IMG/VR virus record: IMGVR_UViG_3300046507_000667
Span: 185,348 to 249,347 of that record
Strand: one strand, 5' to 3'
Length of the DNA: 64,000 nucleotides
This document shows positions 231-61,649 of this stretch, piece by piece (the stretch's first letter is position 1; every line of letters starts with the position of its first letter). A program made the translations under genes and the position numbers. The notes beneath the pieces are model-generated. The model worked only from the letters and a program-made list of their open reading frames with translations. It was not told the DNA's origin and made no database searches.

Positions 231-1280
231 CATATGTTAACCCTAGTATCGTTATTACTAAAGTATGTATGATTTAAATTTCTAAATCAATAATATCCCG
301 CTCATATAATTGCTTAATGATAAAAGCAGATGTCATCATTCCATGTAGAGAAGGAACTCGAATTACTTCAATTCCATGCTCTTTGCAAAGTTTAAACTTA
401 GTTTTGTCTCTATTCATTGTCTTTGGAAATTCAGCTTCTCTTCCTTGCTTGGAAATATAATGCTGTTCACCATCACATTCAATAGCTAAGTTGTACTCTG
501 GTAGGAAGAAATCAATCCTAAGACCAAATTCTAGCTTAAGCCAGTCAAAAGTCTTTTCTTCTTCATATACAATTTCAACTTCATCCAGTACTTCTTTAAC
601 TGCAATTGAAGTCTTTGATTTAGTTTGATTACATGGACACCTAGTACCATTATGAAATAAATCAGGACGAGTTTTCCAATCCTTTCCACAGGTCTTATGT
701 CTAAGTAATACATGAGTTTTGTTATTCACATAGCTACTAATTAAAGTATATTCATTTCCTGTCAAATCTTTTAGCTTTTGACTAAATTCTTCAGCAGTAT
801 AACTCCATGATCTATGTGTAGCACACTTGGGACAATTATTCGGTTTTGGTTTAAGAAAATCATAAGGAGACGTGGTTCCCCACTCATGCCCACACTTATT
901 GTGTTTGAGCATAATAGGATCATGATTCCGAATATACTGTCCTAGAACTGTATACTCTTTACCATATCGATCGCTAACTCGTTTACAAAATTCATCATGT
1001 GTAAGTTGTTTTGGCATTACAATTCTCAGTAGTAGAAACTAAGAATCTGTTACACAATCACCCTCTACCGATACATATCTCATGCTTTCACATGAGTTCA
1101 GATCATATCTTCATACTTAGTTTCAAGTATGTCTCCCGTTTCCCCTGCACTTGCAGAGTACGCCTTATGGCTGATCGTTGAACGTTCCTTTTTCAAGGCT
1201 TCGCTGCTGATTGTCCTCATCTTTACATGTTAGGAGTTTCCAGCAATTAGAGAGATTTAATGAGAGCAACTCGGCAGTTT
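231..1280 (-). mobile_element. Group I self-splicing intron in gyrB
   Basis: 5' exon ends in U (GAGGGU) and the intron ends in G; P1 (GAGGGU/GCUCUC) and P10 (GCCGAGUU/GAUUCGGC) both pair; core elements AAUUGCUGGAAAC, AAUCAGCAG, GUUCAACGAUCA and GAAGAUAUGAUCUG are present; splicing restores LVEG-DSAGG. Confidence 0.93.
274..1017 (-). CDS. Intron-encoded homing endonuclease (Vsr/EDxHD-like nuclease with two Cys-containing N-terminal repeats)
   Basis: Two repeats (HNKCGHEW..CPKC, HKTCGKDW..CP) and C-terminal RIDFFLPEYNLAIECDGEQH; lies entirely inside the intron. Confidence 0.8.
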   Translation of the reverse strand: MPKQLTHDEFCKRVSDRYGKEYTVLGQYIRNHDPIMLKHNKCGHEWGTTSPYDFLKPKPNNCPKCATHRSWSYTAEEFSQKLKDLTGNEYTLISSYVNNKTHVLLRHKTCGKDWKTRPDLFHNGTRCPCNQTKSKTSIAVKEVLDEVEIVYEEEKTFDWLKLEFGLRIDFFLPEYNLAIECDGEQHYISKQGREAEFPKTMNRDKTKFKLCKEHGIEVIRVPSLHGMMTSAFIIKQLYERDIIDLEI

Positions 1281-2618: not shown

Positions 2619-2770
2619 GAATTTCTACCTTTCAAATATTTATTTTAGCGAATCTGAAGTATAACTACCAAAATAATTAGGACTATAACAATCAGTTCTC
2701 TTTTGCGTTCACGGAGAGTTGTTAGTACCTTTTTGTTACCTTTTTGTGGCATCTTGAACCTATCCTATAT

Positions 2771-6903: not shown

Positions 6904-6915
6904 AACAATTACTTA
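6904..6915 (+). promoter_or_regulatory. Late-type promoter AACA-N6-TA
   Basis: AACA ATTACT TA upstream of the lysis cluster; fits the AR9 nvRNAP consensus AACA-N6-TR. Confidence 0.5.
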
Positions 6916-8822: not shown

Positions 8823-8834
8823 AACACTGGAGTA
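8823..8834 (+). promoter_or_regulatory. Late-type promoter AACA-N6-TA
   Basis: AACA CTGGAG TA between a terminator and the endolysin gene. Confidence 0.5.
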
Positions 8835-20961: not shown

Positions 20962-21275
20962 TATGATAATACTTCTATAAAAGGAATTAATTCGGTAGGT
21001 GCTCTAAGTTTACTAATAATGTATGTCAATACAACTCTATTTTGTGAAGAACCATAGTGCTTATGTGATAGCATTATAAAACGATAGCAATTTGACCCTT
21101 CAGTGGTGTGCATCTCGTATTTTTCATTTACATGAGATTTTTTCCATTCTTCAAAACGCCATTCAATTTCTTTTATGCATTCTTCTACAGTCAATGCTGA
21201 AAAGCTATGATCAACATCCGGTTCTTTATAAGGAGGTCGAACTACTTCAAGAAAATAGATGTATTTCTTCGTCAT
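20961..21275 (-). CDS. LP...LKLLG family paralogue, divergent (cluster 2)
   Basis: SALTVEEC; RAPTELIPFIEVLS. Confidence 0.65.
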   Translation of the reverse strand: MTKKYIYFLEVVRPPYKEPDVDHSFSALTVEECIKEIEWRFEEWKKSHVNEKYEMHTTEGSNCYRFIMLSHKHYGSSQNRVVLTYIISKLRAPTELIPFIEVLS

Positions 21276-21975: not shown

Positions 21976-22333
21976 TACTCATTCCTAAAAGCTTAAGTTG
22001 ATTAGATATTTCTTCTGGAAGCTCAATATACCTGATATATATTCTATTGATAGTTTCAGTCTTAGTATCAACTGTAATTTGACCAGAATATGGATCTTTA
22101 CAACGAAAGATTCGATACGCAAACTCATCTCGACCTGCTTCAGTTTCTACATCATAGTCAGATCGAGATAGTTTGTGAGTGTTATATGGTTTTTTATTAT
22201 TACCTTCGATATCCTTAGCAATAATAAGCTCTGCAGCTTTCATAGCTGCTTGATTAGCTTCATCCATTGTGATAAAGCTTTTCTGAACTGACTCAGGACT
22301 GGCTTTGATTTGAATATTCCAAATTGATTTCAT
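21968..22333 (-). CDS. LP...LKLLG family paralogue (cluster 2)
   Basis: SFITMDEA; ELPEEISNQLKLLGM. Confidence 0.8.
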   Translation of the reverse strand: MKSIWNIQIKASPESVQKSFITMDEANQAAMKAAELIIAKDIEGNNKKPYNTHKLSRSDYDVETEAGRDEFAYRIFRCKDPYSGQITVDTKTETINRIYIRYIELPEEISNQLKLLGMSND

Positions 22334-23338: not shown

Positions 23339-24076
23339 ATGGTTAAAAAAATTAAAAAGGTTGTGGATGATACTTTAATCGACACATCCTTAGTTATCGA
23401 AGCACCTAAAAGACCTGAGCCGGACGAAGAGGAATTTGATCCTACAAAATCCATCAAAGTAGACATTGATAATCTGGAACCAGATGACGACAATATTGAG
23501 ATTTTAGGAAAAAATCAACAATATTCATTGACGATGTATCTTGACAAAAATGTCGATGCATCTACATATGTAAAGTTTATCAAAGCTTGTGAACGAGGAA
23601 TTCGTTCTAATGAAGATTATAAGCTTTATTTAGATTCTTTACGTGAATTGGATTTCTTTTGTCAAGATGCTTTCTTATCAAAGATTACATCAATGGATGC
23701 TGAAATTCAAATTCATCACCATCCTCTTACATTATATTCTATTACTTCAGCTATTGTCTCTAAGATGTTAGACTCTGGAGAAAAGGTATCATCATTTATT
23801 GTAGCTGATCGAGTTCTTAATCTACATTTTACCAATCAAGTTGGTCTGACTCCATTGACAGTTACCAATCATGAATTAGCCCACATGAACCAATTGAAGC
23901 TTCAACGTAGGCAGATCTTTGGTAATTGGGAGAAGTTCTTTGAGGAACATCGTGGTTATTTCAATGATTACGATAGAGAAGTAGTAAAGACTCTAGTAGA
24001 ACGTGTTAGGATTGAACGTTCAGATGATACTGTAAAGCAAATCGGTTATTCTAAGAAGGAGCAAGAAAATGGCTGA
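23339..24076 (+). CDS. HNH-like (His-Me) protein, paralogue 1
   Basis: GIRSNEDYKLYL...EIQIHHHPLTLY...VGLTPLTVTNHELAH. Confidence 0.6.
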   Translation: MVKKIKKVVDDTLIDTSLVIEAPKRPEPDEEEFDPTKSIKVDIDNLEPDDDNIEILGKNQQYSLTMYLDKNVDASTYVKFIKACERGIRSNEDYKLYLDSLRELDFFCQDAFLSKITSMDAEIQIHHHPLTLYSITSAIVSKMLDSGEKVSSFIVADRVLNLHFTNQVGLTPLTVTNHELAHMNQLKLQRRQIFGNWEKFFEEHRGYFNDYDREVVKTLVERVRIERSDDTVKQIGYSKKEQENG

Positions 24077-24779
24077 AGAAAGTAAAGCAGTACCATATAG
24101 TAAATTTCAGCCTGACTTTGACTACTATGGTAAACCAGCATTCTATGCAGAAATGCAGCTTCTTGACAATGAGAAGAATAAAGAAAAATTCGTTAAATCT
24201 ATTGAACGAGCTATCCGTACCTCTCCAGAATATAGAAACTACATTAAATATCTAAAGACTGAGGCATTACTTAACTACTGTGTACTTATGGGAGCAATGC
24301 CTGAAGAAGTTGCACAGAAACTTAAGATTGAAATGCACCACTGTCCAATTACACTTTATGATCTAGTAGATACAGTTCTTATTAAATATCTAGTATTGGA
24401 CAAGCCTTTCACACGTCTATCAATTGCTAATGAAGTAATGGATGCGCACTTCATGTCTAATATTGGTATCGTGCCAATGACTGTAACTGCACATCAGATG
24501 GCTCATAAAGGTGTAAAACTTATTAAACCTACTGATATCTTTGGTAATTTCCATCGATTTTTAGAACAATATGAAAACTTTGTACCAGAGGAAACTCGTA
24601 GTAAAGTTGCTGGACTCCTAGCTCTTAAGTCTGAATTTGTCGAAACTATTCGAGAGAATGTATTGACTGTAGATGAGAAGTTATTCATTGAAGATGATCT
24701 AAAGAATTATTATCGTCTAGAGTTTAATATGGAGCCTCAAGAAGTTTCTGAGGATGAAGAAAAAGAAAACGATGACTGA
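24069..24779 (+). CDS. HNH-like (His-Me) protein, paralogue 2
   Basis: AIRTSPEYRNYI...KIEMHHCPITLY...IGIVPMTVTAHQMAH. Confidence 0.6.
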   Translation: MAEESKAVPYSKFQPDFDYYGKPAFYAEMQLLDNEKNKEKFVKSIERAIRTSPEYRNYIKYLKTEALLNYCVLMGAMPEEVAQKLKIEMHHCPITLYDLVDTVLIKYLVLDKPFTRLSIANEVMDAHFMSNIGIVPMTVTAHQMAHKGVKLIKPTDIFGNFHRFLEQYENFVPEETRSKVAGLLALKSEFVETIRENVLTVDEKLFIEDDLKNYYRLEFNMEPQEVSEDEEKENDD

Positions 24780-25266: not shown

Positions 25267-25278
25267 AACAGTTTAGTA
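25267..25278 (+). promoter_or_regulatory. Late-type promoter AACA-N6-TA
   Basis: AACA GTTTAG TA, 22 nt before ORF 25301. Confidence 0.55.
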
Positions 25279-25300: not shown

Positions 25301-25705
25301 ATGAACTGGAAGTTTTGGGAAAAGAAGAAAGTTGAAGAAACTGTAGACTACAGTCCATCACCGGGTACTCGCTTTGTCAATACTAATTTTGAAGAGCATA
25401 CCAAAGCATTATTTTTTCTAATTGGACATGAAGTAAAGCTAATTCATAGTCGAATCAATTTAGCTCATGATCCTAAAGTTATCTTTCGTGATAGGCAAGT
25501 AGTCACTTATGTAAGTGAAGCCTTTCAGAAAATTGATGCAGCTATTGCTGAACCACATCGCCGTCTTCTATTAATGTACTTTACTAAAGATTCACTGGAT
25601 AACCTAATCCAAGAAACTCTAGTAGCTCAATTAGTACAACGTGGTATTGATATCAATGCTGCAGTAATTGAAGGTGATAATAACGAAGAATCTAAGGATT
25701 TATAA
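25301..25705 (+). CDS. Hypothetical protein (late-type promoter upstream)
   Basis: 134 aa, GAGG Shine-Dalgarno, AACA-N6-TA at 25267. Confidence 0.75.
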   Translation: MNWKFWEKKKVEETVDYSPSPGTRFVNTNFEEHTKALFFLIGHEVKLIHSRINLAHDPKVIFRDRQVVTYVSEAFQKIDAAIAEPHRRLLLMYFTKDSLDNLIQETLVAQLVQRGIDINAAVIEGDNNEESKDL

Positions 25706-26536: not shown

Positions 26537-26631
26537 ATAAATAATATATGCTTAATTATTTCTTTGTATAGAGAATTTTTTCTGTGCTCCGGTAAAGAAT
26601 TTGAATTAACCTTGATAAATATATTATATAT

Positions 26632-27083: not shown

Positions 27084-28436
27084 ATGCTCAAGGTAGAACC
27101 ACGAAATCTGAATGAAGATGTTGATCTAACAAAACTAATTACAAACCCTAATCCGCTTGAGTCGGATTATGTCACATTCAATCAGGATGGAGTATTCTCT
27201 CAATCAATTTTTGGTAGCCTATCTAATTCAGTTGACTGGTCTTGCCATTGTGGAAGTCTAGTTGGTGAATTTAATAAGGGTATTGAGTGTCATAGCTGTG
27301 GTCATCCAGTCGCATTTAAAGGACTGATGATGGAACGTGAAGGTTGGATTGATATGGTTGATCCAGTCATCCATCCACTATTCTATCGATATATTAAGAA
27401 GGTCGTAGGTGGAACTGCACTAGAAAAGATTATCAATTATCGTGCAGAAATCAAGGTTGAGGGTCTTCCAATTGATCCTCCTATTGAACCACCATATGCA
27501 AGTATCGGTATGGGAGCATTGATTGAGAATTTTGAAGAGATTCTTAATCACTTCCTAGAAAAGAAAAATCAGAAATTCTATAAAGAATATAAGTTCATTG
27601 TTGATAATATTGACAAGGTATTCATTCAATACCTTCCAGTTATTAATAGTCGTCTTCGTCCTGCTATCCTAGTAGATGGTGAATTCAGCTTTGATGCTAT
27701 TAATAATCTATACAATCAGCTGATCCAGAATAGTAATCTATTGAAGAGTCTGTCAACTCCAGAGCGGATTCCTCTCAATATTTATGCATTGCAGTATAAG
27801 AATCAGAAACTTGTCAACGAGATCTATGACACTATTACTTCTAACCTATCTTCCAAAGAAGGTTATATTCGTAGCACTCTTTTCGGTAATCGTCTTAATT
27901 TCACTTCTCGTTGTGTCATCACCCCTCTGGACGGAAGCTACGACATTGATGATATTGTCATCCCTTACAATGCCGCACTAGAACTATTAAAGCCTCAAGT
28001 ACTTCGTCGTCTAGCAAATCTAAAAAAATGCACATTGACGGCAGCTACAGAGATCTTTAATAAGGCTGTACTAGAGTTTGATAGTCTTGTTTACAAGATT
28101 ATGATCGATATCATTGAGAATGGTAATGTCCGGATGCTTCTTAATCGAAATCCATCGATTAATCTGGGTTCAATTCTTATGGTAAAGATTGCTGGTATTA
28201 AGAGAGACATGTCAGATCTTACTGTATCTCTACACAATCTAATCTTAAAGCCTATTGGTGGCGATTATGATGGTGACGTTCTTAACTTCATCTTGCTATA
28301 TGGTCAAGAATTCATCGATCTATTTGCTAAGTTTAAGCCTTCCCATATTATGATTGATATGGATAATGGTACCTTTAATAAGGCATTCCTGCCAGCTAAA
28401 GACACCATTCTTGGTCTAGAGAGTCTATTCAATTGA
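27084..28436 (+). CDS. rpoC: Non-virion RNA polymerase beta' subunit, N-terminal part (AR9 gp270-like)
   Basis: DGVFSQSIFG, CHCG..CHSCG zinc site, LRPA, GNRLNFTSRCVITP, LNRNPSI, catalytic GDYDGD. Confidence 0.92.
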   Translation: MLKVEPRNLNEDVDLTKLITNPNPLESDYVTFNQDGVFSQSIFGSLSNSVDWSCHCGSLVGEFNKGIECHSCGHPVAFKGLMMEREGWIDMVDPVIHPLFYRYIKKVVGGTALEKIINYRAEIKVEGLPIDPPIEPPYASIGMGALIENFEEILNHFLEKKNQKFYKEYKFIVDNIDKVFIQYLPVINSRLRPAILVDGEFSFDAINNLYNQLIQNSNLLKSLSTPERIPLNIYALQYKNQKLVNEIYDTITSNLSSKEGYIRSTLFGNRLNFTSRCVITPLDGSYDIDDIVIPYNAALELLKPQVLRRLANLKKCTLTAATEIFNKAVLEFDSLVYKIMIDIIENGNVRMLLNRNPSINLGSILMVKIAGIKRDMSDLTVSLHNLILKPIGGDYDGDVLNFILLYGQEFIDLFAKFKPSHIMIDMDNGTFNKAFLPAKDTILGLESLFN

Positions 28437-32984: not shown

Positions 32985-34328
32985 ATGGACCTTAAAGAGA
33001 AAAGGTTAGTTGCAACAAAGTATGATATTAACGTAACAAATGCCCTTTATAGTAGTATTCTAGGCTTAGTTACTGATTATCTAACGAAACTATTCCCTCC
33101 TAATTATCTTGCATATATTTACGTAGGAAATAGTATTGCTGCGCTAACTGAATCAAATCTAGATGACGATACTAAGATGGTTAAGGATAATCCTAACTTT
33201 AGTATCAAAATGAATTATGCTCCACAAGATTCTTCTTTTAATGGAGACCCATTCTTAATGGGTAATATGCTAGTATGGCGTGATGTCCATGCCTATAAAC
33301 ATGCATATTCTAGAATTCTTGCTGATTTTAATGAGCAGGTATTTATTAGTGGATTCGAAACTAGAGCAAAGCATAGTTTTGATATCACTGTCACTGTAAA
33401 TACTGAAATGGAGGCATTAAACCTACAGGGTTTCCTTCGCCAGAAATTAGGTATTAATAGACCTTACTTCCTAAATCGTAGATTTATTGAAGTTCCTCTA
33501 CCAAAATCATTAATTGGAGCTATTGCTGCAGTTAAAGGCTTTGATTTTACTACTCCACAGAACGTTCAAGACTTTAATAGGTACCTAGATGGTATTGCTG
33601 ATGGAGTTGTTACCTATAAAAAGCATTCTATCTCAGGTAAATACCTATATTTTTATAAATATTGTGCAAATTTACTATTTAGAGTAGAAGGTTTTGATGA
33701 TATCGATACTCAACGTGAAGGTAAAGTAATTACTTCTAGTTCAGTCAAATTTACTTGCAGTGTAGAATATAATAATCATCAATCTTTCATCTCAGAATGC
33801 TATAAGGTATACCAACCTACATTCACAGATGAAGATTTTGTCCTAGGTGACAATGAAGTTGGAGCTATTATTCATTGGGCAACTAACTTTGTAGTCCAAG
33901 AACAACTTCCTGATGGTAGAAAATGTATTGCTAAGATTGAAGTAGTAACTGACGTCAATACACCCTTAGATTCTACCTGCTTTAAACCTGAACTTGCATC
34001 AATTATTATTAAATATATTGAAGCACTTAAAGTAGCACCCATTCCAGATGGTACAACAGATACTGATCCATTTCAAGTGGTCAATTCTAAGGTCAAATTA
34101 ATGGTCTTTAGAGATACTGTACCATTAAAATTAAACGATGATTTTACTATTGATTGGAATACTTATACCATCAATATTAATAATCCTCGATATAATTATG
34201 AATATCGTATTTTTATCTATGTTCCGATGAGTGAAGTAGGCGCACTTGCCGCAAGTCAACCTATTAAAGGTGACACCATTGGTAATGCTCTGATTGAAGA
34301 TACAGATCCTTCAGAAAGCAACATATAA
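32985..34328 (+). CDS. Probable virion structural protein
   Basis: 447 aa, beta-rich, first of a plus-strand late-type cluster; no specific motif recognised. Confidence 0.55.
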   Translation: MDLKEKRLVATKYDINVTNALYSSILGLVTDYLTKLFPPNYLAYIYVGNSIAALTESNLDDDTKMVKDNPNFSIKMNYAPQDSSFNGDPFLMGNMLVWRDVHAYKHAYSRILADFNEQVFISGFETRAKHSFDITVTVNTEMEALNLQGFLRQKLGINRPYFLNRRFIEVPLPKSLIGAIAAVKGFDFTTPQNVQDFNRYLDGIADGVVTYKKHSISGKYLYFYKYCANLLFRVEGFDDIDTQREGKVITSSSVKFTCSVEYNNHQSFISECYKVYQPTFTDEDFVLGDNEVGAIIHWATNFVVQEQLPDGRKCIAKIEVVTDVNTPLDSTCFKPELASIIIKYIEALKVAPIPDGTTDTDPFQVVNSKVKLMVFRDTVPLKLNDDFTIDWNTYTININNPRYNYEYRIFIYVPMSEVGALAASQPIKGDTIGNALIEDTDPSESNI

Positions 34329-34331
34329 ATA
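34320..34331 (+). promoter_or_regulatory. Late-type promoter AACA-N6-TA
   Basis: AACA TATAAA TA before ORF 34375. Confidence 0.5.
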
Positions 34332-40079: not shown

Positions 40080-40235
40080 AATTAATCCTTAAGTGAATTG
40101 GATACTCAATTGTACTTCAAATATATAATATATGCACTAAGGATATTTCAAATTTACAAAAAAAAAAGATCCCGTTTTACCGGGATCGAAACCTTATCCT
40201 CGGGGTCTAGCCGATAGGACAGGCGTTATCATTCT

Positions 40236-46066: not shown

Positions 46067-47005
46067 TTAGAATTTTGTGAAGACTACATTGGATCTACTA
46101 ATTTGAGGTGTAAAAGCTACATAGTGCTTATCGATTTCAAAAGTAATACATGAAATTGATTGCTGAAACTCTGGATGATCTTCAATATACTGCTTATAAT
46201 TTTCACGTAAATAAGCAAGCAATGTTTCTCTTACATCATCCTTGTGATCATCTAGCTCAATATTAGTTCGTACATCTAATAACCATGCAAAACCTAGCTC
46301 AGTCACAGTTGGTTCATTACCAATTTTATAAGACCAAGCAGCATCACCCTTATATTCAGTAGATTTATACCAAAGCTTTACATCACTAGCAGTAGATTGT
46401 TTATACATATGCTGTGCTAGATCAGTACGCATATAATCTAGTAATGGCATATACAATTCACTTGCTTTCATCCTAAATTCATGGGATTTAGGATCAACTT
46501 CTACTGTCTTAAAGAACTTCTTATTTGGAGTAATACGGATATTCAGTCCTACATAGAACTGCTCTTCTTTATTATCTTCTGTAAGATTCATTTCTTCAAG
46601 ATTATGCATTTGTGCATCATCTATATGCTGTAATTCATTATATAATACACTTAGACCACTAGCATAGTGATAATGTTCTGGAGATTGAAAATTTGTACCA
46701 TACTCATAATCTTTCTCTTTAATAAAGTAATGCTTAAAGTCTCTGCTATTTAGAAGGATATTGTTACCTTCAATAAATAAATTACCATTTAAGAGAATGC
46801 ATGTACTTTGGGCAAATGTATCTACTGTAACGACTAACTGACTATTTCCTGCCTCATCTTGTATCCATTTGGCATTCAGGCTTTTAATCTGAGATTGGAG
46901 AAGAATAAGTAACTGCCAACCAAACTGAATTCGTTTCAGTGTAGTCTTAATTTTCCATACAAATTTAGAAAAAAATAAAAAGTGATTCTTCTTATCTGAA
47001 GCCAT
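46067..47005 (-). CDS. Hypothetical protein
   Basis: 312-aa ORF. Confidence 0.75.
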   Translation of the reverse strand: MASDKKNHFLFFSKFVWKIKTTLKRIQFGWQLLILLQSQIKSLNAKWIQDEAGNSQLVVTVDTFAQSTCILLNGNLFIEGNNILLNSRDFKHYFIKEKDYEYGTNFQSPEHYHYASGLSVLYNELQHIDDAQMHNLEEMNLTEDNKEEQFYVGLNIRITPNKKFFKTVEVDPKSHEFRMKASELYMPLLDYMRTDLAQHMYKQSTASDVKLWYKSTEYKGDAAWSYKIGNEPTVTELGFAWLLDVRTNIELDDHKDDVRETLLAYLRENYKQYIEDHPEFQQSISCITFEIDKHYVAFTPQISRSNVVFTKF

Positions 47006-47072
47006 ATGGCCTCCTATGTAATAGAAAAGGGATATACTGCCATTTTTACATAGACAGTATATCCCGTTGTTA

Positions 47073-49016
47073 TTATTCTACTTCACTTTCAGACGTCTTT
47101 ACAACCTTAACACCGATACCATTAAACATTGCACGTACTGACTGTGCAGCATTCGATGCATCGATATCTTGATCAATTTCAATAGATTCTAAAGTTTTTA
47201 CATCCTTCTGTAGAAGAGTCCGAATCATATTTTGTCGATTGGTACGACTTGATGAATATGCCTTAAGGAACTTATCAACTGTCTCCGGTTGCTCAAGCAA
47301 AGCAAAGTTAAAATATTCCTGTTCGCCAAATTTGATAGGATTTGAATTGAAAAGTGCATTTCCCTTTTTGTACTTATCATTATTCTTATACGGCACATCT
47401 AGCAGACTTGTCATTTCCGCCGCTCGTGCAGAGAACTTACCTGCTGGTACGTGCTTAAGCATGATAAAATACATATCACCAATAACGAGCTTATCTTCAA
47501 CTCCCTTGAATTTAATCTTTTCTACAGGGAACCGAGTATACAAGTCTTCCATGAGTTGAGGTGTTGAATTCTCATAGAATGGTGGTTGATGGATAAGAAT
47601 ACCATGCTCTTTAGCCTCTTCAAGCCACAAAGCAAGTACTTCATTCTCGCCATCATCAGTGTCAATGATATTCTCTTGGATGAACTGACCATACTTCGGA
47701 CAGACCATTTCATAGAATGTCATAATTTCACTGAGAAGCTTCTCATCATCATCTTTATTCTCACGGATGATATAGTCTGCAATGAAGTTTAATTCTTGCT
47801 CAAAACACTGAGCCAGATTCATACGACCAATAACACCTAGAGAATTCAGTGCAATATCAGCACGATGGAGACCATCTTCTGACATAGGCATTTCATCATC
47901 AGGTACAATTTTCGAGATAACACCCTTATTGCCGTATCGACCAGTAAGCTTAGCACCTACAGCTAGTGGAACATCAATAATGACTGTTACACGGACTACA
48001 ATACCTTCAAATTCACGCTTATCGAAGCTAAACTTGATTTCAGGATTCTTATAGTCTTTAGCTTTCTGGTACCAATAAGATAGATCCTCACTTAGCTTAC
48101 TACCTGCTTTCTTGTATTTTTCCACAAGATTAATAAGCTTAGTATAAATCTTATCTTGGGTATCAGCAATCTCTTTAAAATAGCTATTGTATGCTAAATC
48201 TAGCTCTTCTAGAAGATTACAGAATACTTCGATATCAGTAACAGTACCTGATGCATAGAATGGAGTATCATTAGGATTTACCTTACGAAACTCTGTATCA
48301 CGCATTTCATCTAGCATTGTACTATAGTTAATCCGACGACGAGCAGCTAGAATACCGCCAGTAATCTTTTCACCAATACGAGGAATACCTTTATAAACTT
48401 CTTTGGTACCTAGAAGATTAATTAAGATATCATTCTGATTAAGAACGATATCGAAGATCTGAACTTGCTGGTGACCATATTTCTCTGAAGCAGATTGACC
48501 AATGACAATACCATCTTCATAGGTAAGACCGTGAAATGGAATGAATACTGACTTGAGATTATTCCCAAACTTAAGGTTCAGGTTTTCATCATACATACCA
48601 TTCTTATAAATCCAGTCACCTTCAGCAATTGTATTACCTTTGACTACTTCTGTTTCATTTAGTTCTTGTTCAAAGCCATAAGTTTCAGTAAGATTCTTAG
48701 CCTTGGTCCAATTGATGATATTATATTCATCACCATCAAAAGTAATGATTAGCTTATGATTCTGATTAAATTCAAGAATCTCCATAATCTGAAGATCTTT
48801 CTTTGCAATCTTAAGACCAGTAGAATACTTACCGATCTGCTTTTCAAAACGAGTAAATACCTTTGGTGGTTCAGCACCTTTATATACAAGAAGCTGACCT
48901 TGATGACTAGTAAACATATTGACTCGACCACCATCACAGTGATTGACATTGGGAATCAGTAGTTCTTCTGCCAAGAATGAATGATCTAAAATTTCTTTTG
49001 TTGGTGTATCTGACAT
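47073..49016 (-). CDS. rpoB: RNA polymerase beta subunit, C-terminal part (non-virion, AR9 gp089-like)
   Basis: RVNMFTSHQGQ, GNNLKSVF, YEDGIVI, GAKLTGRYGNKGVISKI, LGVIGRMN, GKFSAR, KFGEQE. Confidence 0.92.
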   Translation of the reverse strand: MSDTPTKEILDHSFLAEELLIPNVNHCDGGRVNMFTSHQGQLLVYKGAEPPKVFTRFEKQIGKYSTGLKIAKKDLQIMEILEFNQNHKLIITFDGDEYNIINWTKAKNLTETYGFEQELNETEVVKGNTIAEGDWIYKNGMYDENLNLKFGNNLKSVFIPFHGLTYEDGIVIGQSASEKYGHQQVQIFDIVLNQNDILINLLGTKEVYKGIPRIGEKITGGILAARRRINYSTMLDEMRDTEFRKVNPNDTPFYASGTVTDIEVFCNLLEELDLAYNSYFKEIADTQDKIYTKLINLVEKYKKAGSKLSEDLSYWYQKAKDYKNPEIKFSFDKREFEGIVVRVTVIIDVPLAVGAKLTGRYGNKGVISKIVPDDEMPMSEDGLHRADIALNSLGVIGRMNLAQCFEQELNFIADYIIRENKDDDEKLLSEIMTFYEMVCPKYGQFIQENIIDTDDGENEVLALWLEEAKEHGILIHQPPFYENSTPQLMEDLYTRFPVEKIKFKGVEDKLVIGDMYFIMLKHVPAGKFSARAAEMTSLLDVPYKNNDKYKKGNALFNSNPIKFGEQEYFNFALLEQPETVDKFLKAYSSSRTNRQNMIRTLLQKDVKTLESIEIDQDIDASNAAQSVRAMFNGIGVKVVKTSESEVE

Positions 49017-55897: not shown

Positions 55898-56959
55898 TCA
55901 TTTGAGTTTAAACACTTTTTCTTTTATTTTGTCCTTGCTTACCCCAAAGTCTTTTTCTTTCTTAAACGTATTATAGTGAATACGAATAGAATTAAAGTTA
56001 TCGTAATCCAAGATAAACTTATAGTAATCTAGATCAACATCATTATCCGAATACATATCAAGATTCATGCTTAGGAATCCAAGTCGTCTTAGCATTTTTA
56101 CCACTAATAGAAATGACTTACCATTAGCACTACAAAAGACTGTATCTTTAGACTTTTCTTTGTCATAAAGATTTAGCCATACTGAAGTAATATCCATAAC
56201 ACCTTCAGTTAAGACTAAATTCAAAGTTGGTGACAGTAGATCTAGTTCACCACCAATTGTATAGATTTTACTACCTATATCAAATGGTCTATTCATTGAC
56301 TCAGTATAGTAACGTCGTCCACTATGATGATCTTGAGTGTGTCGAAAACCCATATAGTTAGTATCCATTGATAGAAATCCCAATGAATACTTCTCTAAGA
56401 AAGTTCTCAAGCTAGCCAAACCATTTGACTGCTCATAATACTCTTTTAGATGCTCCATTTCATTCAATTTCATAAAAGAATTCAATGAAGTAACTATCTT
56501 TAAATCTTCTAGATCTTGCATCGTTAAATCAACACCCATTCGATCTACTAAATATTCGATCTTGTCTCGATAATGCTTCTTACCTAGACTAATTGGAGGT
56601 CTCTTAAAACGTTTCTTTTCTAGAAATGGGTTATCAGTATCACTGACATAACGACCTGTATCTCTTAAAGTCTTTTTAGAAGTCTTACCAATTCGATTGA
56701 TTAGATCTTGGTCATCAACTTCCATATCTCTAAGAGATCCATTATTCAAGAATCCCTTAGTATTGCAACGCTGGCAATAAAAAGCAAATGGACTGGTAGT
56801 GGAGATATATAAGTGAGCATGTGTTAAATCATTCTTCGAGTCACCACAATATGGACACCGAATAATCAACTCACTACCAGAAGTATTACGATAAACTACT
56901 TTACTATTAGACCTTAGGTTTTGCTCGAACTCAACTAGTAAGCTTGAGCTATCTGACAT
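55898..56959 (-). CDS. DNA primase (T4 gp61-like, zinc-binding domain plus TOPRIM)
   Basis: RCPYCGDSK..HLY..FYCQRC; LTEGVMDITSV; YSDND. Confidence 0.8.
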   Translation of the reverse strand: MSDSSSLLVEFEQNLRSNSKVVYRNTSGSELIIRCPYCGDSKNDLTHAHLYISTTSPFAFYCQRCNTKGFLNNGSLRDMEVDDQDLINRIGKTSKKTLRDTGRYVSDTDNPFLEKKRFKRPPISLGKKHYRDKIEYLVDRMGVDLTMQDLEDLKIVTSLNSFMKLNEMEHLKEYYEQSNGLASLRTFLEKYSLGFLSMDTNYMGFRHTQDHHSGRRYYTESMNRPFDIGSKIYTIGGELDLLSPTLNLVLTEGVMDITSVWLNLYDKEKSKDTVFCSANGKSFLLVVKMLRRLGFLSMNLDMYSDNDVDLDYYKFILDYDNFNSIRIHYNTFKKEKDFGVSKDKIKEKVFKLK

Positions 56960-57229: not shown

Positions 57230-58696
57230 TTATAGTTGCTCCACATAATTAAGGATTTCGACCATTGCTGATTTAATACTGATTTCCTTGGTAGGCTGAT
57301 AAGGCTCACCATTAGGTAGATTATACTCAGCAAAGTCTGTATTGATAACTTCACCAATAAATTGAGTAATCACTGTAATATCAGCTTTGGTATCGAGATG
57401 CTTATACTTATCGGCAATATTCTTAAAGACAGATGATTCTTTAATCTCTAAGAAATTCTTACCACGAGTAAAATTGTGTTTGATGGTATGCTTTGGTACT
57501 GGCTTACCAAGAAGAATATAGCTAATAAATGGATAGTTATTACGTTCAAACCATTCTTTTGCAATAAGAACTACCTTAACATAGTCCTCTTTATTCATCA
57601 TATAAGAATCAATTCCTTTACCAATCTGATTTGAGATAAAGAAATTGAGAATTTTGGTTTGCCCTGTATGAATGTCAATATGCTTCTTATAATAATCAAA
57701 TAGTGCAGGATCGACATACTTCATATTACGATCAATGAAGTTAGCGATATCTTCACGCATCAATACAATTTGAAGCTCACTAGATGTCTTCAGTAGTTTC
57801 TGTTCAACCTTTACAAAAGGATTGGAAGCATCTGAATCAGTCTTAGTAATACTCAGTGGCTTATAGGTTAACCGGAAGTTAGCAGTAAAATTGTATTCAA
57901 TTTGTTTCTTAATAACAACGTGAAAGAATGAGACAATTGACTTATTAACATCAAGCTTTGGAAGAATACTTGTCAATACATTACGATGGATTTCAATAGC
58001 CATTGTCTTATCATTGATAGATAAATTCTTCAAATAAGACCACATGACCTTATCAGAATACAATGTATTTGCTACTGCTGTTTCAACAAACTTCTGAATC
58101 TTGATGACTAGATCCAGTGGTTCACCATCATCATCAAAGTTGAACTTCTGGAGAATATGGTGGACAACTTCTAGAAAGAGTGTATCTTCTTTACGAATAT
58201 TATGTACTGCCATGAAATGACAGAGAAGAGGAATCACAGTCCGGAAAAGGATTGCAGAACCAATAATTCGCTTTGCATAGGAATCTTTGAACTGCAATTG
58301 ATTGTCTTTAGAAGGACTTTCAATAGTGATTTGATAATTCTCTTCAACGTAATCATAAATAGATTGAATTAGAGGTTCATCCTCAATAATATAATCACGA
58401 ATTGCTTCTGCAAGACGGATACGATCTTCTTGGCTATCACCATATTCACCTTGGTCCAGTAGCCCCTTGATAGTCAAATATGTTTCTGCAAGATGTGGGT
58501 TCTTTCCCAAAAAAGTATTTACATCGTCAATGAAAATATCAATTGACTTATGGAAAACACGCTTCTTAAGAAAGCTAAATCCAAACGACACGGTATCCAA
58601 AAGGCTTTCATCGGAGATATGTCCTTCAAAAACTTTATTCTTGAAGTCGATGTTGACAATTTTGTCTCCGTTGTGTGTTACAAATTTAGCGGCCAT
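57230..58696 (-). CDS. Sigma-like promoter-specificity subunit of the non-virion RNAP (AR9 gp226 / phiKZ gp68-like)
   Basis: LFRTVIPLLCHF, YSDKVMWSYLKNLS and ILPKLDVNKSIVSFFHVVIKKQIEY..TYKPL match my recollection of AR9 gp226; lies two genes from the chaperonin, as gp226 does from gp228. Confidence 0.75.
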   Translation of the reverse strand: MAAKFVTHNGDKIVNIDFKNKVFEGHISDESLLDTVSFGFSFLKKRVFHKSIDIFIDDVNTFLGKNPHLAETYLTIKGLLDQGEYGDSQEDRIRLAEAIRDYIIEDEPLIQSIYDYVEENYQITIESPSKDNQLQFKDSYAKRIIGSAILFRTVIPLLCHFMAVHNIRKEDTLFLEVVHHILQKFNFDDDGEPLDLVIKIQKFVETAVANTLYSDKVMWSYLKNLSINDKTMAIEIHRNVLTSILPKLDVNKSIVSFFHVVIKKQIEYNFTANFRLTYKPLSITKTDSDASNPFVKVEQKLLKTSSELQIVLMREDIANFIDRNMKYVDPALFDYYKKHIDIHTGQTKILNFFISNQIGKGIDSYMMNKEDYVKVVLIAKEWFERNNYPFISYILLGKPVPKHTIKHNFTRGKNFLEIKESSVFKNIADKYKHLDTKADITVITQFIGEVINTDFAEYNLPNGEPYQPTKEISIKSAMVEILNYVEQL

Positions 58697-58753
58697 GCTT
58701 TTCCTAATTAAAAGATTTATTAAAGTACGTCAATATTATAATATATTTATACT

Positions 58754-59650
58754 TTATTTTTTAACTTTGTTATTAACTTTATTATTCAACTTATTGTCAA
58801 CTTTGTTATTGACTGTAAAGTTAGCTTTATTTTTACCAGTATTGGTAACTGAAATACCTTTCTTAGAACGATTCTTTCTACCCTTCTCAAGATGATCCAA
58901 ACCAGCAGTGATAGTCTCTTTAGGAGCCTGTCGTGCTATACGTTTAGCCTTCTTTTCTGCAATTTTTGTATGCTCCGCAGCAGTTTTAGCTTTATTGTAT
59001 TCTTCTAACTTAGTGACAGAAGAAGGTACACTTTGCTTAAATTTAATCTTATTTAGCGGAACCATCGATGTAGCATAAGCACTTCGATCTAATAGATGAT
59101 TATCTTTAAGATAAATCAGTGCAAAAGTAATGCTCTTTTCAAAGAACATGATTGCATCTGGGTTACGCTTTTCTGGATAAGTATCTAGTGCTTTCTTAGC
59201 AAGCTTATCTTTCAAGAACTCAATTAAGAGATCATGAAAATTGAAAATATAAGCATATGTAAAGTTAAATGATGGGCCATTCGTAAAGAAACGAATATTG
59301 TAAGTAGTCAATGATGTTGGAGTTCCTTCAACTTCTTGAAACTCAAATACGACATCATAGAATAGATCATCATAAGATTCTGAAGGTACTTTGACAGTTA
59401 CAAAGATACTTGAGGCTACTCTAAAATAACTATGGGCAAATTTCTTACCCCTTCTTAGCATATTAGCAAGTTTTGATCTAATAGAATCAAGATAAAGCTT
59501 TGCTTGAGCTGAGGCATTTCCAGGATTGCCTGTTGGATTAGTAAGGAAAGAATTTACAGTAAATGTCTTAGGAACTTTCTTTTCATTCCCAATGGTCTGT
59601 AAATCTTTTGGACTTACTTTACCTATAGGCGCTGCATTCGGCTGAGCCAT
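58754..59650 (-). CDS. Hypothetical protein with basic C-terminal tail
   Basis: 298 aa; FFTNGPSFNFTYAY; tail NNKVDNKLNNKVNNKVKK. Confidence 0.75.
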   Translation of the reverse strand: MAQPNAAPIGKVSPKDLQTIGNEKKVPKTFTVNSFLTNPTGNPGNASAQAKLYLDSIRSKLANMLRRGKKFAHSYFRVASSIFVTVKVPSESYDDLFYDVVFEFQEVEGTPTSLTTYNIRFFTNGPSFNFTYAYIFNFHDLLIEFLKDKLAKKALDTYPEKRNPDAIMFFEKSITFALIYLKDNHLLDRSAYATSMVPLNKIKFKQSVPSSVTKLEEYNKAKTAAEHTKIAEKKAKRIARQAPKETITAGLDHLEKGRKNRSKKGISVTNTGKNKANFTVNNKVDNKLNNKVNNKVKK

Positions 59651-59735: not shown

Positions 59736-61649
59736 TTAAAGGGACAATTGATTTGAATTAAGTAGTAGACCTACAATAGAGAATGATGCCCTTAAAATTT
59801 CAAGGTCTGTCTCTACTGGAGCTAAAACTGAAGTAGTTGTAATACTTTCAATTTCATCATTTACAATATTAAGAATCTTTGGGAAGCTCTTAGCATTGCA
59901 TTCAATTTCACCTACACTTAGTTCAATTGAATCTTCATAGAATGTATTAACCTTAGTTGGCATATCATTGATATATGATAGCCATGCCTCATAATCATTC
60001 TCTGCATCTGTCGGCATATCACGATTCTCAAATGGAATCATAGCTAGACTAACGTATGCAATAATTAAATCATTAATAACGTTCCATGCACACATATCTT
60101 CATTGTATTTATATAGATTCAATGATGGATCTACTTCATACAATGCTTTAAGAGTAATCAATGCATACAATGGAACAACGTTACCACCCATTGTATAACC
60201 ATTACGCATTACTGACTGACAAGCTAAAACTGAATCTTCTACTAGTTCTTTGATAGAAGTCTTTTCATCTTCAGTACGTCCACCAACAAAGATAGTTGAA
60301 TGAACACCTACTAGACTTGCTAGACGATTACGTAACTGACCACGCTTAATGATTAGATTCTTGGAAGTCTCATCAAGTTCTTTCTGAATATCAGCCATAC
60401 GTTTAGTATATGCTTCAGTACTCATACGAACTCCAGCACCAGTTTCAAATAATACTCCTTGAGGAGTAATAGTAACTTTACGTGCATTACCAATAAATGA
60501 GCCAAGATCCATATCTTTAATATTGTCTGGAGATACTTGTGAAAGACCTAATGGGTCAGTCTTAATATAAGCTGCCAAATCAAGGAATTTCTCATTAGCA
60601 TCATTACTTTCTAGACTTTCTGTCTTAAGATAGTATACTGAAAGTTCTTTAGCTAAGAATGATTCCTGTACAATCTTTTGAATAATTTCAGCTTGATATA
60701 CATCAGCAATAACTACGATTGGAGGAAGCTTTCCATCCTTACCATTAGCCACTACAGACATATTAGCTTTGATACCATCCACAATCTTTGAATGGAAATC
60801 GAAAAATTCATAACCTTGTAAGATCATAGGGTTCTCTAGCTCTACTGAAGTCTCTGACTTAAATAGAGAAGGATGAACCATACTTAATGCAGTAGTATGA
60901 TAGCCATAACGATTATTGATCTTAAGACCTTCATTATCGTCTGGAGCAAGCTTGATAGCTACTACTGAATGTGAGCTAAGAGTTGACATAAGTTGTGCAA
61001 CTTCTTGACCAATACTCTTATCATTATTATTTGATAAGGTTGCTACAGTAGTTAGAATACGAAGCTTATCTTCTTGTGACAATTCATCAAGTCGATATGT
61101 ATAATAGCGCTTAATGATAGTCTCTAGATCTTTTTGAAGCAGGTCTAAAAATGATACAAACTGCTTACGAGTACGGAAAGTATCTAGAATACTTTGATCA
61201 TTTTCATCAAATGTATCTTTGAGTACTTTATATACTTCATTAGCTGCCAGAATAGCTGATGTTGAACCATCACCAACCTTTTGTACTAGATTAGATGAAA
61301 TACTCATCACTAAACGATAGATAGTATCAGCACTAATGGTTGGAATCTTCATTGACTTAAGGATAGCTAAACCATCCTTAGTTACTAATTGCTCACCACC
61401 TTGACGAATTACTGTATTCGCACCATATGGACCATATGATTTACGAAGTACATCTGAAATTTCTTGAAGAACCTTTGATGTATTGTCGGTAAGAGTTTTA
61501 GCATCAAACATGTTCTCAATAAGCTTACTCTTAGTAGACTCTGTCTTGACAATTTCACCTGCAGGGGTATCATTAAAGTCAATGTCAGATAGCTTATTTT
61601 CTGCTACTAGTTCACGAATGAATGCTTTAATAGCTGCCTTGATAGTCAT
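59736..61649 (-). CDS. groEL: GroEL-like phage chaperonin
   Basis: LRKSYGPYGANTVI, VTKDGLAIL, VGDGSTSA, IFVGGRTEDE, EDSVLACQS, GGNVV. Confidence 0.88.
   Translation of the reverse strand: MTIKAAIKAFIRELVAENKLSDIDFNDTPAGEIVKTESTKSKLIENMFDAKTLTDNTSKVLQEISDVLRKSYGPYGANTVIRQGGEQLVTKDGLAILKSMKIPTISADTIYRLVMSISSNLVQKVGDGSTSAILAANEVYKVLKDTFDENDQSILDTFRTRKQFVSFLDLLQKDLETIIKRYYTYRLDELSQEDKLRILTTVATLSNNNDKSIGQEVAQLMSTLSSHSVVAIKLAPDDNEGLKINNRYGYHTTALSMVHPSLFKSETSVELENPMILQGYEFFDFHSKIVDGIKANMSVVANGKDGKLPPIVVIADVYQAEIIQKIVQESFLAKELSVYYLKTESLESNDANEKFLDLAAYIKTDPLGLSQVSPDNIKDMDLGSFIGNARKVTITPQGVLFETGAGVRMSTEAYTKRMADIQKELDETSKNLIIKRGQLRNRLASLVGVHSTIFVGGRTEDEKTSIKELVEDSVLACQSVMRNGYTMGGNVVPLYALITLKALYEVDPSLNLYKYNEDMCAWNVINDLIIAYVSLAMIPFENRDMPTDAENDYEAWLSYINDMPTKVNTFYEDSIELSVGEIECNAKSFPKILNIVNDEIESITTTSVLAPVETDLEILRASFSIVGLLLNSNQLSL

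What the first reader, a model, noticed from the sequence alone, without database searches (positions are those of the whole stretch)
57230..58746. AR9 gp226-like sigma subunit plus AACA-N6-TA promoters predicts possible uracil-containing DNA
Established: the AR9 non-virion RNAP recognises template-strand 3'-UUGU-N6-AY-5' and requires deoxyuridines, via gp226. Seen here: a protein matching my recollection of gp226 motifs, in the same neighbourhood as the chaperonin, and exact AACA-N6-TA sites before four late-type genes (6904, 8823, 25267, 34320). Inference: the late-promoter logic is conserved in a phage that probably infects a Gram-negative host, and its genome may contain dU instead of T. 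Caveat: this short motif occurs by chance about once per kb per strand in AT-rich DNA.
Basis: partly seen in the sequence, partly recalled or inferred. Interest (0 to 1): 0.6.

Follow-up and report, generated by a model that had tools for sequence, protein, structure and literature searches.

The report
Uracil-DNA jumbo phage sigma-like subunit
This gene encodes the promoter-recognition subunit of a giant phage's own RNA polymerase, and its conserved uracil-selecting residue, matching late promoters and uracil-pathway genes predict that this uncultivated rhizosphere phage, a distant relative of Yersinia phage phiR1-37, has uracil in place of thymine in its DNA.

Summary
Window 57230-58696 (-) encodes a 488-aa ortholog of AR9 gp226 (PDB 7S01 chain A, E 2.8e-26; full-length fold match E 5.6e-17). 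Its closest named relative is Yersinia phage phiR1-37 g245 (43% identity). The GroEL-x-gp226-primase gene order is conserved.

The window is the last 64 kb of a complete 249-kb metagenomic jumbo phage. It shares 108 of 316 ORFs with phiR1-37, at a median 42% identity.

The uracil-selecting valine (AR9 V206 = V217 here) is invariant in 32 homologs. All four split nvRNAP core subunits are present.

AACA-N6-TA is not a chance motif:
- It is 3.4-fold depleted outside upstream zones.
- 58 of its 97 copies lie within 150 nt upstream of genes, in sense.
- AACA-N6-TAG (35 of 41 copies upstream) came second in an unbiased scan.
- It precedes structural genes, and orthologous sites exist in phiR1-37.

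An AR9-like early motif (ATATATTAT-N6-G) drives the gp226-like gene itself.

The genome has orthologs of the phiR1-37 dCTP deaminase and dTTP pyrophosphatase. It has no ThyA, ThyX, dUTPase or UDG.

dU-DNA is therefore well supported (about 0.8) but not chemically shown. I rate this a new member of a known kind.

The parts
57230..58696 (-). gp226-like promoter-specificity (sigma-like) subunit of the non-virion RNA polymerase, 488 aa. The 2.1bis helix reads YSDKVMWSYLKN (residues 213-224), and V217 corresponds to AR9 V206.
   Evidence: PDB 7s01_A E 2.8e-26. PHROG 25005. phiR1-37 g245 43% identity over 91% of the length. V217 invariant in 32 homologs. AlphaFold model pLDDT 82.5; Foldseek 7s01_A E 5.6e-17.
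58731..58746 (-). Early-type (virion RNAP) promoter of the gp226-like gene. ATATATTAT lies at 58746-58738, followed by N6 and then G at 58731, the predicted start site.
   Evidence: Motif instance. It matches the AR9 early consensus AAATATATATTAT-N6-G (PMC5312081) and the annotated promoter before phiR1-37 g245. 50 of 64 genome copies lie within 150 nt upstream of a gene, in sense.
58754..59650 (-). Ortholog of phiR1-37 g244, a virion protein and one of the proteins reported as exclusive to uracil-DNA phages.
   Evidence: 39% identity. Table 3 of PMC10303552.
59736..61649 (-). Divergent GroEL-like chaperonin.
   Evidence: Cpn60_TCP1 E 8e-16. 33% identity to phiR1-37 g243. Same position relative to gp226 in AR9, S6, LPJP1 and phiR1-37.
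55898..56959 (-). DNA primase ortholog, which completes the conserved GroEL-x-gp226-primase block.
   Evidence: 42% identity to phiR1-37 g247. AR9 g225 primase holds the same position.
27084..28436 (+). nvRNAP beta'N subunit.
   Evidence: PDB 7s00_d E 4.1e-66. Rpb1 domains 1 and 2. 54% identity to non-virion phiR1-37 g274. It lies downstream of the early motif at 26619.
47073..49016 (-). nvRNAP betaC subunit.
   Evidence: PDB 7s00_C E 9.4e-114. Rpb2_6. 48% identity to phiR1-37 g261.
6904..6915 (+). Late-type promoter AACAATTACTTA(G) before ORF 6976-7299.
   Evidence: The phiR1-37 ortholog g302 carries the same motif upstream.
8823..8834 (+). Late-type promoter before the endolysin gene 8894-9676.
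   Evidence: Endolysin is 57% identical to phiR1-37 g289.
25267..25278 (+). Late-type promoter before ORF 25301-25705. It sits back to back with an early motif at 25245 (-).
34320..34331 (+). Late-type promoter before the structural gene 34375-36180.
   Evidence: The ortholog phiR1-37 g271 is a virion protein with the same motif 45 nt upstream.
1040..1051 (-). Further late-type promoter (AACA-N6-TAG) before ORF 274-1017.
2726..2737 (-). Further late-type site before the topoisomerase II gene 1257-2618.
47060..47071 (-). Further late-type site before ORF 46067-47005.
23339..24779 (+). Paralogous pair orthologous to phiR1-37 g282 and g278, which are reported as uracil-DNA-phage-exclusive proteins.
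   Evidence: 51% identity each. They are paralogs of each other. Table 3 of PMC10303552.

Best explanation
The window belongs to a complete 249-kb jumbo phage from rhizosphere metagenomes. It is a distant relative of Yersinia phage phiR1-37 and shares the AR9/PBS1 transcription scheme of two phage-encoded RNA polymerases.

The inferred sequence of events is as follows.
1. A virion-packaged RNA polymerase transcribes early genes from ATATATTAT-N6-G promoters. These genes include the gp226-like gene, the four split beta/beta' subunits of the non-virion polymerase, a dCTP deaminase (Dcd) and a dTTP pyrophosphatase (Dtt).
2. Dcd makes dUTP and Dtt removes dTTP, so replication yields DNA with dU in place of dT.
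3. The gp226-like protein joins the non-virion core as a sigma-like subunit and reads the template strand 3'-UUGU-5' at -11 to -8, which appears as AACA on the coding strand.
4. The -10 uracil sits in a pocket formed by the 2.1bis helix (V217, M218) and betaN (R372, R383). The valine side chain leaves no room for a thymine methyl group.
5. Transcription starts 6 nt downstream, at the A of TA(G), and drives structural, lysis and virion-polymerase genes.

What is shown: the homologies, residue conservation, motif statistics, gene content and synteny. What is inferred: holoenzyme assembly, the start sites, uracil dependence and the dU content of the DNA.
For: gp226 orthology:
- PDB 7s01_A E 2.8e-26.
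- Full-length fold match, followed only by phiKZ gp68.
- 43% identity to phiR1-37 g245.
- GroEL-x-gp226-primase order conserved in five phages.

Pocket:
- YSDxV[IM]WxYL is present in all 32 homologs, and V217 is invariant.
- Fraser 2022 shows that V206 excludes thymine and that V206G accepts it.
- In betaN, R363 is conserved and K375 is replaced by R. phiR1-37, a proven dU phage, has the same residues.

Core enzyme: all four chains match the AR9 nvRNAP at E 4e-66 to 9e-114.

Late promoter:
- 58 of 97 AACA-N6-TA sites lie within 150 nt upstream of genes, in sense.
- Fifteen other dinucleotides at the TA position give at most 13% upstream. One-base variants of AACA give at most 9 of 22.
- AACA-N6-TAG ranked second among roughly 100,000 gapped patterns (33 of 41 upstream, P 6e-30).
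- The motif is depleted elsewhere in the genome (38 against 129 expected).
- Genes behind the late motif: 26 have virion-protein orthologs, 17 have non-virion orthologs and 14 have no phiR1-37 ortholog. For the early motif the counts are 0, 5 and 40.
- phiR1-37 has the same motif (58 of 69 TAG sites upstream). 30 ortholog pairs carry it in both genomes (odds ratio 7, P 4e-6).

dU pathway:
- Dcd ortholog at 51% identity, with HAEE and PCxxC motifs kept.
- Dtt ortholog at 31% identity, Ham1 family.
- The two genes sit in the same neighbourhood as in phiR1-37, where both enzymes were assayed (PMC12697855).
- No ThyA, ThyX, dUTPase, UDG or thymidylate kinase in the complete genome.
- All six proteins reported as exclusive to uracil-DNA phages have orthologs.
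Against: - There is no chemical evidence on the DNA and no RNA data. All eight sequencing runs that hold the phage are DNA runs kept as contigs, so no start site is mapped.
- The Dtt ortholog is only 31% identical, so its substrate preference is not assured.
- I207 is replaced by M, and betaN K375 by R. These are shared with other clade members and with phiR1-37 respectively, but their effect is untested.
- My gene calls are a crude ORF picker, so individual promoter-to-gene distances may be off.
- The host is unknown.
Confidence: 0.8

Rival explanations
1. The transcription machinery is as described, but the DNA carries ordinary thymine or only partial substitution. On this reading the conserved valine and AACA motif are inherited features that no longer impose a need for uracil.
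For: Nothing here measures base composition chemically. The I-to-M change next to the valine and the low identity of the Dtt ortholog (31%) leave room for altered specificity.
Against: The valine is invariant in 32 homologs. The betaN pocket residues are identical to those of the proven dU phage phiR1-37. The Dcd and Dtt orthologs are retained in their conserved neighbourhood. No thymidylate synthase of either kind and no dUTPase is present in a complete genome. A phage that makes dUTP from dCTP without a dUTPase would incorporate dU.
Confidence: 0.12
2. The AACA-N6-TA sites are chance occurrences of a short AT-rich motif, and the real late promoter is something else.
For: The motif specifies only six bases.
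Against: The motif is enriched upstream (59 against 21 expected) and depleted elsewhere (38 against 129). The enrichment is specific to this spacing, to the TA dinucleotide and to each base of AACA. It ranked second in an unbiased pattern scan. It is associated with virion-protein genes and is conserved before orthologs in phiR1-37.
Confidence: 0.04
3. The protein is a phiKZ gp68-type fifth subunit with a different promoter specificity (TATG-type) and no base-modification requirement.
For: phiKZ gp68 is the second structural match (8que_B, E 7.5e-07) and is a recognised distant homolog of gp226.
Against: The match to AR9 gp226 is far stronger by sequence and by fold. The 2.1bis helix is conserved with AR9. 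The enriched late motif is AR9-like, not TATG.
Confidence: 0.03

Closest known systems
Yersinia phage phiR1-37 g245 and its genome (NC_016163)
   Same: - Closest named relative of the protein: 43% identity over 91% of its length.
- Same flanking genes (GroEL, g244, primase).
- 108 shared ORFs in long colinear blocks.
- Same early motif and, by my scan, the same late motif AACA-N6-TAG.
- Same Dcd / beta'C / Dtt neighbourhood.
- Same betaN pocket residues.
- Neither genome has ThyA or dUTPase.
   Different: - Median protein identity is only 42%, and about two thirds of ORFs are not shared.
- No homolog in the 5.8-billion-protein collection exceeds 49% identity to the gp226-like protein.
- The source is rhizosphere metagenomes, not a Yersinia isolate.
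- The virion RNAP beta gene is split by an HNH-like ORF in this genome.
- dU content is measured for phiR1-37 and only predicted here.
Bacillus phage AR9/PBS1 gp226 (PDB 7S01 chain A), the promoter-specificity subunit of the nvRNAP
   Same: - Homologous over both domains by fold.
- The 2.1bis helix has the critical valine and tyrosine.
- The partner enzyme has four split core subunits.
- Gene neighbourhood is the same.
- An early promoter lies in front of the gene.
- Late consensus is AACA-N6-T-R, and early consensus ends in TATATTAT-N6-G.
   Different: - About 24-30% identity.
- I207 is M here, F261 is A, Y263 is F and Y246 is F. AR9 contacts -9G through the main chain at F261 and Y263.
- betaN K375 is R.
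- The late start region prefers TAG rather than T-A/G.
- AR9 removes thymidine nucleotides with a dTMP phosphatase, while this lineage has a Ham1-family dTTP pyrophosphatase (PMC12697855).
- AR9 has Ugi. No known inhibitor type has been found in the phiR1-37 lineage.
phiKZ gp68, the fifth subunit of the phiKZ nvRNAP
   Same: A distant structural homolog (8que_B, E 7.5e-07) with the same role as an extra subunit needed for promoter-specific initiation.
   Different: Much weaker similarity. phiKZ has thymine DNA and TATG-type late promoters (PMC5312081).

Membership tests
AR9 gp226-type nvRNAP promoter-specificity subunit | Significant sequence homology to gp226 | tested here: met
   7s01_A E 2.8e-26. 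PHROG 25005 E 1.4e-31. tblastn hits occur only in phiR1-37, AR9/PBS1-like, S6-like and LPJP1 phages.
AR9 gp226-type nvRNAP promoter-specificity subunit | Same two-domain fold | tested here: met
   AlphaFold model pLDDT 82.5. Foldseek 7s01_A E 5.6e-17 over 499 columns. TM is only about 0.5, and I suspect (not checked per domain) that this reflects domain orientation.
AR9 gp226-type nvRNAP promoter-specificity subunit | 2.1bis helix with the thymine-excluding valine (V206), plus I207 and Y210 | tested here: met
   V217 is invariant and Y221 is at least 90% conserved in 32 homologs. I207 is M here and in four other clade members. The role of these residues is described in PMC9209446.
AR9 gp226-type nvRNAP promoter-specificity subunit | betaN residues that complete the -10U pocket (R363, K375) | tested here: met
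   R is conserved. K375 is R, identical to phiR1-37 g194. The functional effect of K to R is untested.
AR9 gp226-type nvRNAP promoter-specificity subunit | Partner enzyme: four split beta/beta' non-virion subunits | tested here: met
   betaN 3.3e-81, betaC 9.4e-114, beta'N 4.1e-66 and beta'C 9.1e-73 against the AR9 nvRNAP chains.
AR9 gp226-type nvRNAP promoter-specificity subunit | Binds the core and confers promoter-specific, uracil-dependent initiation on the template strand | not testable with these tools
   This needs reconstitution and in vitro transcription. I did not run a complex prediction.
AR9-type late promoter (AACA-N6-T-R) | Motif over-represented upstream of genes in sense orientation, specific in sequence and spacing | tested here: met
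AR9-type late promoter (AACA-N6-T-R) | Precedes late (structural) genes, not early genes | tested here: met
   For the late motif, 26 genes have virion-protein orthologs and 17 have non-virion orthologs. For the early motif the counts are 0 and 5 (Fisher P 0.015). Only one gene has both motifs.
AR9-type late promoter (AACA-N6-T-R) | Transcription starts at the purine after T | not testable with these tools
   No RNA run holds this phage.
Uracil-DNA (dU for dT) phage | Phage dCTP deaminase that supplies dUTP | tested here: met
   180-aa PF00383 protein, 51% identical to the assayed phiR1-37 Dcd, with catalytic motifs kept (PMC12697855). Its activity is not assayed.
Uracil-DNA (dU for dT) phage | Enzyme that removes thymidine nucleotides (Dtt or Dtm) | tested here: inconclusive
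   A Ham1-family protein of the same length and in the same neighbourhood as phiR1-37 Dtt, but only 31% identical. Substrate preference cannot be read from sequence.
Uracil-DNA (dU for dT) phage | No thymidylate synthase and no dUTPase | tested here: met
   PF00303, PF02511 and PF00692 have no match at E <= 1 in the complete genome, with positive controls.
Uracil-DNA (dU for dT) phage | Inhibitor of host uracil-DNA glycosylase | not tested
   No inhibitor is known in phiR1-37 despite dedicated searches (PMC10303552), so there was no query to use. The genome encodes no UDG of its own.
Uracil-DNA (dU for dT) phage | dU replaces dT in virion DNA | not testable with these tools
   This needs LC-MS or a UDG-sensitivity test.

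The most novel reading that the evidence does not exclude
The combination of a gp226 homolog with the conserved valine, AACA-N6-TAG late promoters, Dcd plus Dtt, and no ThyA or dUTPase could serve as a sequence-only signature of uracil-DNA. It marks a sizeable uncultivated radiation of phiR1-37-type jumbo phages: 28 protein clusters, and three complete genomes that carry the whole set. This phage is a deep, previously unseen branch from the rhizosphere. Within that lineage, the late promoter that the phiR1-37 transcriptome study could not define would be AACA-N6-TAG. Strong avoidance of the motif inside genes points to selection against spurious template-strand initiation.
Probability: 0.6. 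Interest if true: 0.55.

Novelty: new member of a known kind. Interest (0 to 1): 0.45.

Why it matters
Uracil-DNA phages are known from only a handful of isolates. This genome shows that the whole package is retained in a relative with only about 42% protein identity, from a soil-associated habitat. The package comprises the uracil-reading sigma-like subunit, the two promoter classes and the nucleotide-pool enzymes. That gives a practical way to predict dU-DNA from metagenomes.

The result also supplies a candidate late-promoter consensus for the phiR1-37 lineage. The AR9 transcriptome paper (PMC5312081) states that this consensus was missing. It further identifies a divergent set of pocket variants (I to M, K to R) for testing how uracil is read.

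A practical point follows. If the DNA is dU-rich, library preparation with uracil-stalling polymerases would under-sample such phages.

Tried and rejected
- Near-identity DNA search of the gene in the phage collection found no match.
- Pfam gave nothing significant for the protein.
- I looked for RNA runs to map start sites. Only rhizosphere DNA runs held as contigs exist, so I did not use read laying. Contigs cannot show transcript ends.
- I considered a complex prediction (gp226-like protein with beta'N or betaN). I did not run it, because a failure would be uninformative and the homology to all five chains of the solved holoenzyme is already strong.
- I did not attempt a UDG-inhibitor search, because none is known in this lineage.
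- I did not use the exhaustive representative-protein search, because the word-based search and the family scans had already settled the protein's identity.
- Host assignment was not resolved. The evidence is only that the clade's sole cultured member infects Yersinia, and that the protein falls in the phiR1-37-type clade rather than the Gram-positive clade.
- The last 12 kb of phiR1-37 was not fetched, so shared-gene counts are slight underestimates.
- I rejected the idea that the motif's genome-wide rarity is just AACA or TA scarcity. The depletion persists after conditioning on both counts.
Full report
**The feature**

The finding's interval holds one ORF, window 57230..58696 on the minus strand (ATG start, 488 aa). 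The protein has no significant Pfam family match; the only hits were two sub-threshold ones at E about 0.08-0.1. It matches PHROG 25005 'RNA polymerase' at E 1.4e-31. Among solved structures it matches chain A of 7S01, 7UM0 and 7UM1 at E 2.8e-26. That chain is AR9 gp226, the promoter-specificity subunit of the AR9 non-virion RNA polymerase (nvRNAP).

A translated search of 50,697 phage records found relatives in only 21 records. The best is Yersinia phage phiR1-37 g245 (43% identity, 91% coverage, E 5e-116). It is followed by Listeria phage LPJP1, the AR9/PBS1 group (30%) and the Staphylococcus S6 group (25%). The literature describes all of these as proven or presumed uracil-DNA phages (PMC9209446, PMC10303552).

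An AlphaFold model built on 28 metagenomic homologs has mean pLDDT 82.5. Searched against the PDB, it returns AR9 gp226 over its full length (E 5.6e-17), then phiKZ gp68 (E 7.5e-07), and nothing else of significance.

**Genomic context**

The window is the last 64 kb of a 249,347-bp virus record with 127-bp terminal repeats, estimated to be complete. It comes from a JGI metagenome and occurs in eight rhizosphere DNA runs.

I called 316 ORFs with a simple picker. Of these, 108 have tblastn matches in the first 250 kb of phiR1-37. Median identity is 42%, and the matches form long colinear blocks.

Around the finding, the gene order is GroEL-like chaperonin (59736..61649), g244 ortholog (58754..59650), gp226-like gene, a small ORF, then primase (55898..56959). 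This reproduces the order in phiR1-37, AR9, S6 and LPJP1.

All four split core subunits of the nvRNAP are present and match the AR9 chains:
- betaN, genome 45927..47435, E 3.3e-81
- betaC, window 47073..49016, E 9.4e-114
- beta'N, window 27084..28436, E 4.1e-66
- beta'C, genome 96766..98571, E 9.1e-73

Orthologs of the virion polymerase subunits are present as well.

**The uracil pocket**

Fraser et al. (PMC9209446) made these points about AR9:
- The obligatory -10 uracil of the template strand sits between gp226 I207 and betaN R363.
- It bonds to betaN K375 and to the main chain of V206 and I207.
- A thymine methyl group would clash with V206, and the V206G mutant accepts thymine.
- Y210 stacks on the -9 G.

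In this protein the helix reads YSDKVMWSYLKN. V217 corresponds to V206, M218 to I207 and Y221 to Y210. I aligned 32 sequences: AR9, phiR1-37, S6, LPJP1, 27 metagenomic proteins and this one. The valine is invariant and the tyrosine is at least 90% conserved. The I-to-M change recurs in four other clade members.

In betaN, R363 is conserved and K375 is arginine. phiR1-37, whose DNA is known to be dU-substituted, has exactly the same residues. So the pocket is conserved at the sequence level and is indistinguishable from that of a proven dU phage. Its specificity has not been measured.

**The promoters**

The motif is much rarer than chance. The genome has 97 copies against about 312 expected from base composition.

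Several results show that it behaves as a promoter:
- 58 of the 97 copies lie within 150 nt upstream of a gene, in sense. Permuted, re-spaced or reverse-complement controls reach 7 to 33 genes, even though they have 97 to 317 copies.
- Of the 16 dinucleotides possible at the start position, only TA is enriched. Of the one-base variants of AACA, none approaches AACA itself (35 of 41 upstream when followed by TAG).
- Given the counts of AACA and TA, upstream zones hold 59 sites against 21 expected. The rest of the genome holds 38 against 129. This is the pattern expected when spurious promoters are selected against.
- An unbiased scan of about 100,000 gapped patterns ranked ATAT-N2-TAT first and AACA-N6-TAG second (P 6e-30).

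The first pattern belongs to a second motif, ATATATTAT-N6-G. It has 64 copies, 50 of them upstream and in sense. It equals the AR9 early consensus AAATATATATTAT-N6-G (PMC5312081) and the promoters annotated in phiR1-37. One copy lies at window 58746-58738, 42 nt upstream of the gp226-like ATG. AR9 g226 and phiR1-37 g245 likewise have an early promoter in front of them.

The two motif classes partition the genes cleanly:

| Motif upstream | Virion-protein ortholog in phiR1-37 | Non-virion ortholog | No phiR1-37 ortholog |
|---|---|---|---|
| Late (AACA-N6-TA) | 26 | 17 | 14 |
| Early (ATATATTAT) | 0 | 5 | 40 |

Only one gene has both motifs. The early motif lies directly upstream of the gp226-like gene and Dtt, or upstream of a co-directional gene cluster that contains them in the case of the nvRNAP subunits and Dcd. 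The late motif precedes the major capsid, sheath, virion polymerase and endolysin genes.

phiR1-37 itself carries AACA-N6-TAG at 69 places, 58 of them upstream of genes. Thirty ortholog pairs have the late motif in both genomes (odds ratio 7, P 4e-6). PMC5312081 states that no late consensus had been obtained for phiR1-37. A library search found no later paper reporting one.

**Uracil metabolism**

Li et al. (PMC12697855) showed that phiR1-37 makes dU-DNA with two enzymes. One is a dCTP deaminase (g103). The other is a Ham1-family dTTP pyrophosphatase (g100). The two genes flank an nvRNAP subunit gene.

This genome has both enzymes in the same arrangement:
- A 180-aa PF00383 protein, 51% identical to g103, with the HAEE and PCxxC motifs intact.
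- A 353-aa PF01725 protein, 31% identical to g100 over 298 residues.

Profile searches of the complete genome found no ThyA, ThyX, dUTPase, UDG or thymidylate kinase, with positive controls in each search. All six proteins reported as exclusive to uracil-DNA phages have orthologs here. These are g196, g207, g234, g244, g278 and g282 (PMC10303552).

A second complete IMG/VR genome of the clade (263 kb) also has the Dcd-like and Dtt-like genes close together and lacks ThyA and dUTPase.

**Assessment**

Its interpretation is supported on every point that sequence analysis can reach.
- gp226 orthology is near certain.
- That AACA-N6-TA(G) is the late promoter is very likely (about 0.9).
- That the virion DNA has dU in place of dT is likely (about 0.8). 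It rests on homology to a characterised pathway and on the conserved uracil-selecting pocket, not on chemistry.
- The Gram-negative host is plausible but untested. The protein falls in the phiR1-37-type clade and not in the Gram-positive clade.

Gp226 orthologs in presumed uracil-DNA phages, phiR1-37 included, were already noted in the literature. AR9 nvRNAP is already known to partly transcribe phiR1-37 DNA (PMC5449584). This is therefore a new and rather divergent member of a known kind. No relative exceeds 49% identity among 5.8 billion proteins.

The added value has three parts: an explicit late-promoter consensus for the phiR1-37 lineage, the evidence of motif avoidance inside genes, and a sequence-only signature for predicting uracil-DNA in metagenomes.

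Noticed in passing
L002-L006 (phiR1-37, NC_016163 1-250000): phiR1-37 carries AACA-N6-TAG at 69 places, 58 of them within 150 nt upstream of ORFs in sense. These include the major head, sheath and tail-fibre genes. PMC5312081 says no late consensus had been found for this phage.
   Followed up: partly
Genome 102168-107533 (outside the window; window = genome minus 185347): The ortholog of the phiR1-37 virion RNAP beta gene g099 is in two ORFs (922 and 454 aa). An HNH-endonuclease-like ORF (104957-105928) lies between them and has its own AACA-N6-TA site 22 nt upstream. It belongs to a family of five HNH-like paralogs. Another member is at window 274-1017, between the two topoisomerase II genes.
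   Followed up: partly
Genome 71420-78307 (outside the window): The large terminase is in two pieces (71420-72832 and 77519-78307) separated by about 4.7 kb. phiR1-37 has a similar split (g143 and g145). I did not examine whether this is an intron, an intein or a homing-endonuclease insertion.
   Followed up: no
Window 3697-3709, 26619-26631 and 40121-40133: Some early motifs sit in a palindrome (AAATATATAATATATTT), so the consensus reads on both strands. At 26619/26631 there are genes on both sides. At the other two places only one orientation faces a nearby gene.
   Followed up: no
Window 6871/6904 and 25245/25267: Early (- strand) and late (+ strand) promoter motifs lie back to back in the same short intergenic regions and drive divergent genes of different temporal classes.
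   Followed up: no
Whole genome: The tetranucleotide AACA is itself under-represented outside upstream zones: 1405 copies against about 2700 expected from base composition. A second-order expectation explains most of this difference.
   Followed up: partly
L027 (IMGVR_UViG_3300046660_000716, 259 kb, complete): A very distant gp226 homolog (23% identity) keeps the YSDxV[IM]W pattern. Its genome has no PF00383 deaminase and no Dtt-like match. It does have a dUTPase-superfamily ORF (open frame 215 aa) about 3 kb downstream of the gp226 homolog. This could be a dCTP deaminase of the dUTPase fold, meaning another route to dUTP, or a true dUTPase.
   Followed up: no
Window 13044-23160 (-): A run of about 25 small co-directional ORFs (100-160 aa) has no phiR1-37 orthologs. 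They are headed by early motifs at 17484, 19462 and 23262. Only two pairs are detectable paralogs.
   Followed up: no
Window 59736-61649 (-): The GroEL-like protein is long (637 aa) and divergent. Pfam Cpn60 matches only residues 64-147, and identity to the phiR1-37 chaperonin is 33%.
   Followed up: no
Genome 109508-109582: The genome has a single tRNA gene, tRNA-Arg(TCT). phiR1-37 has five tRNA genes.
   Followed up: no
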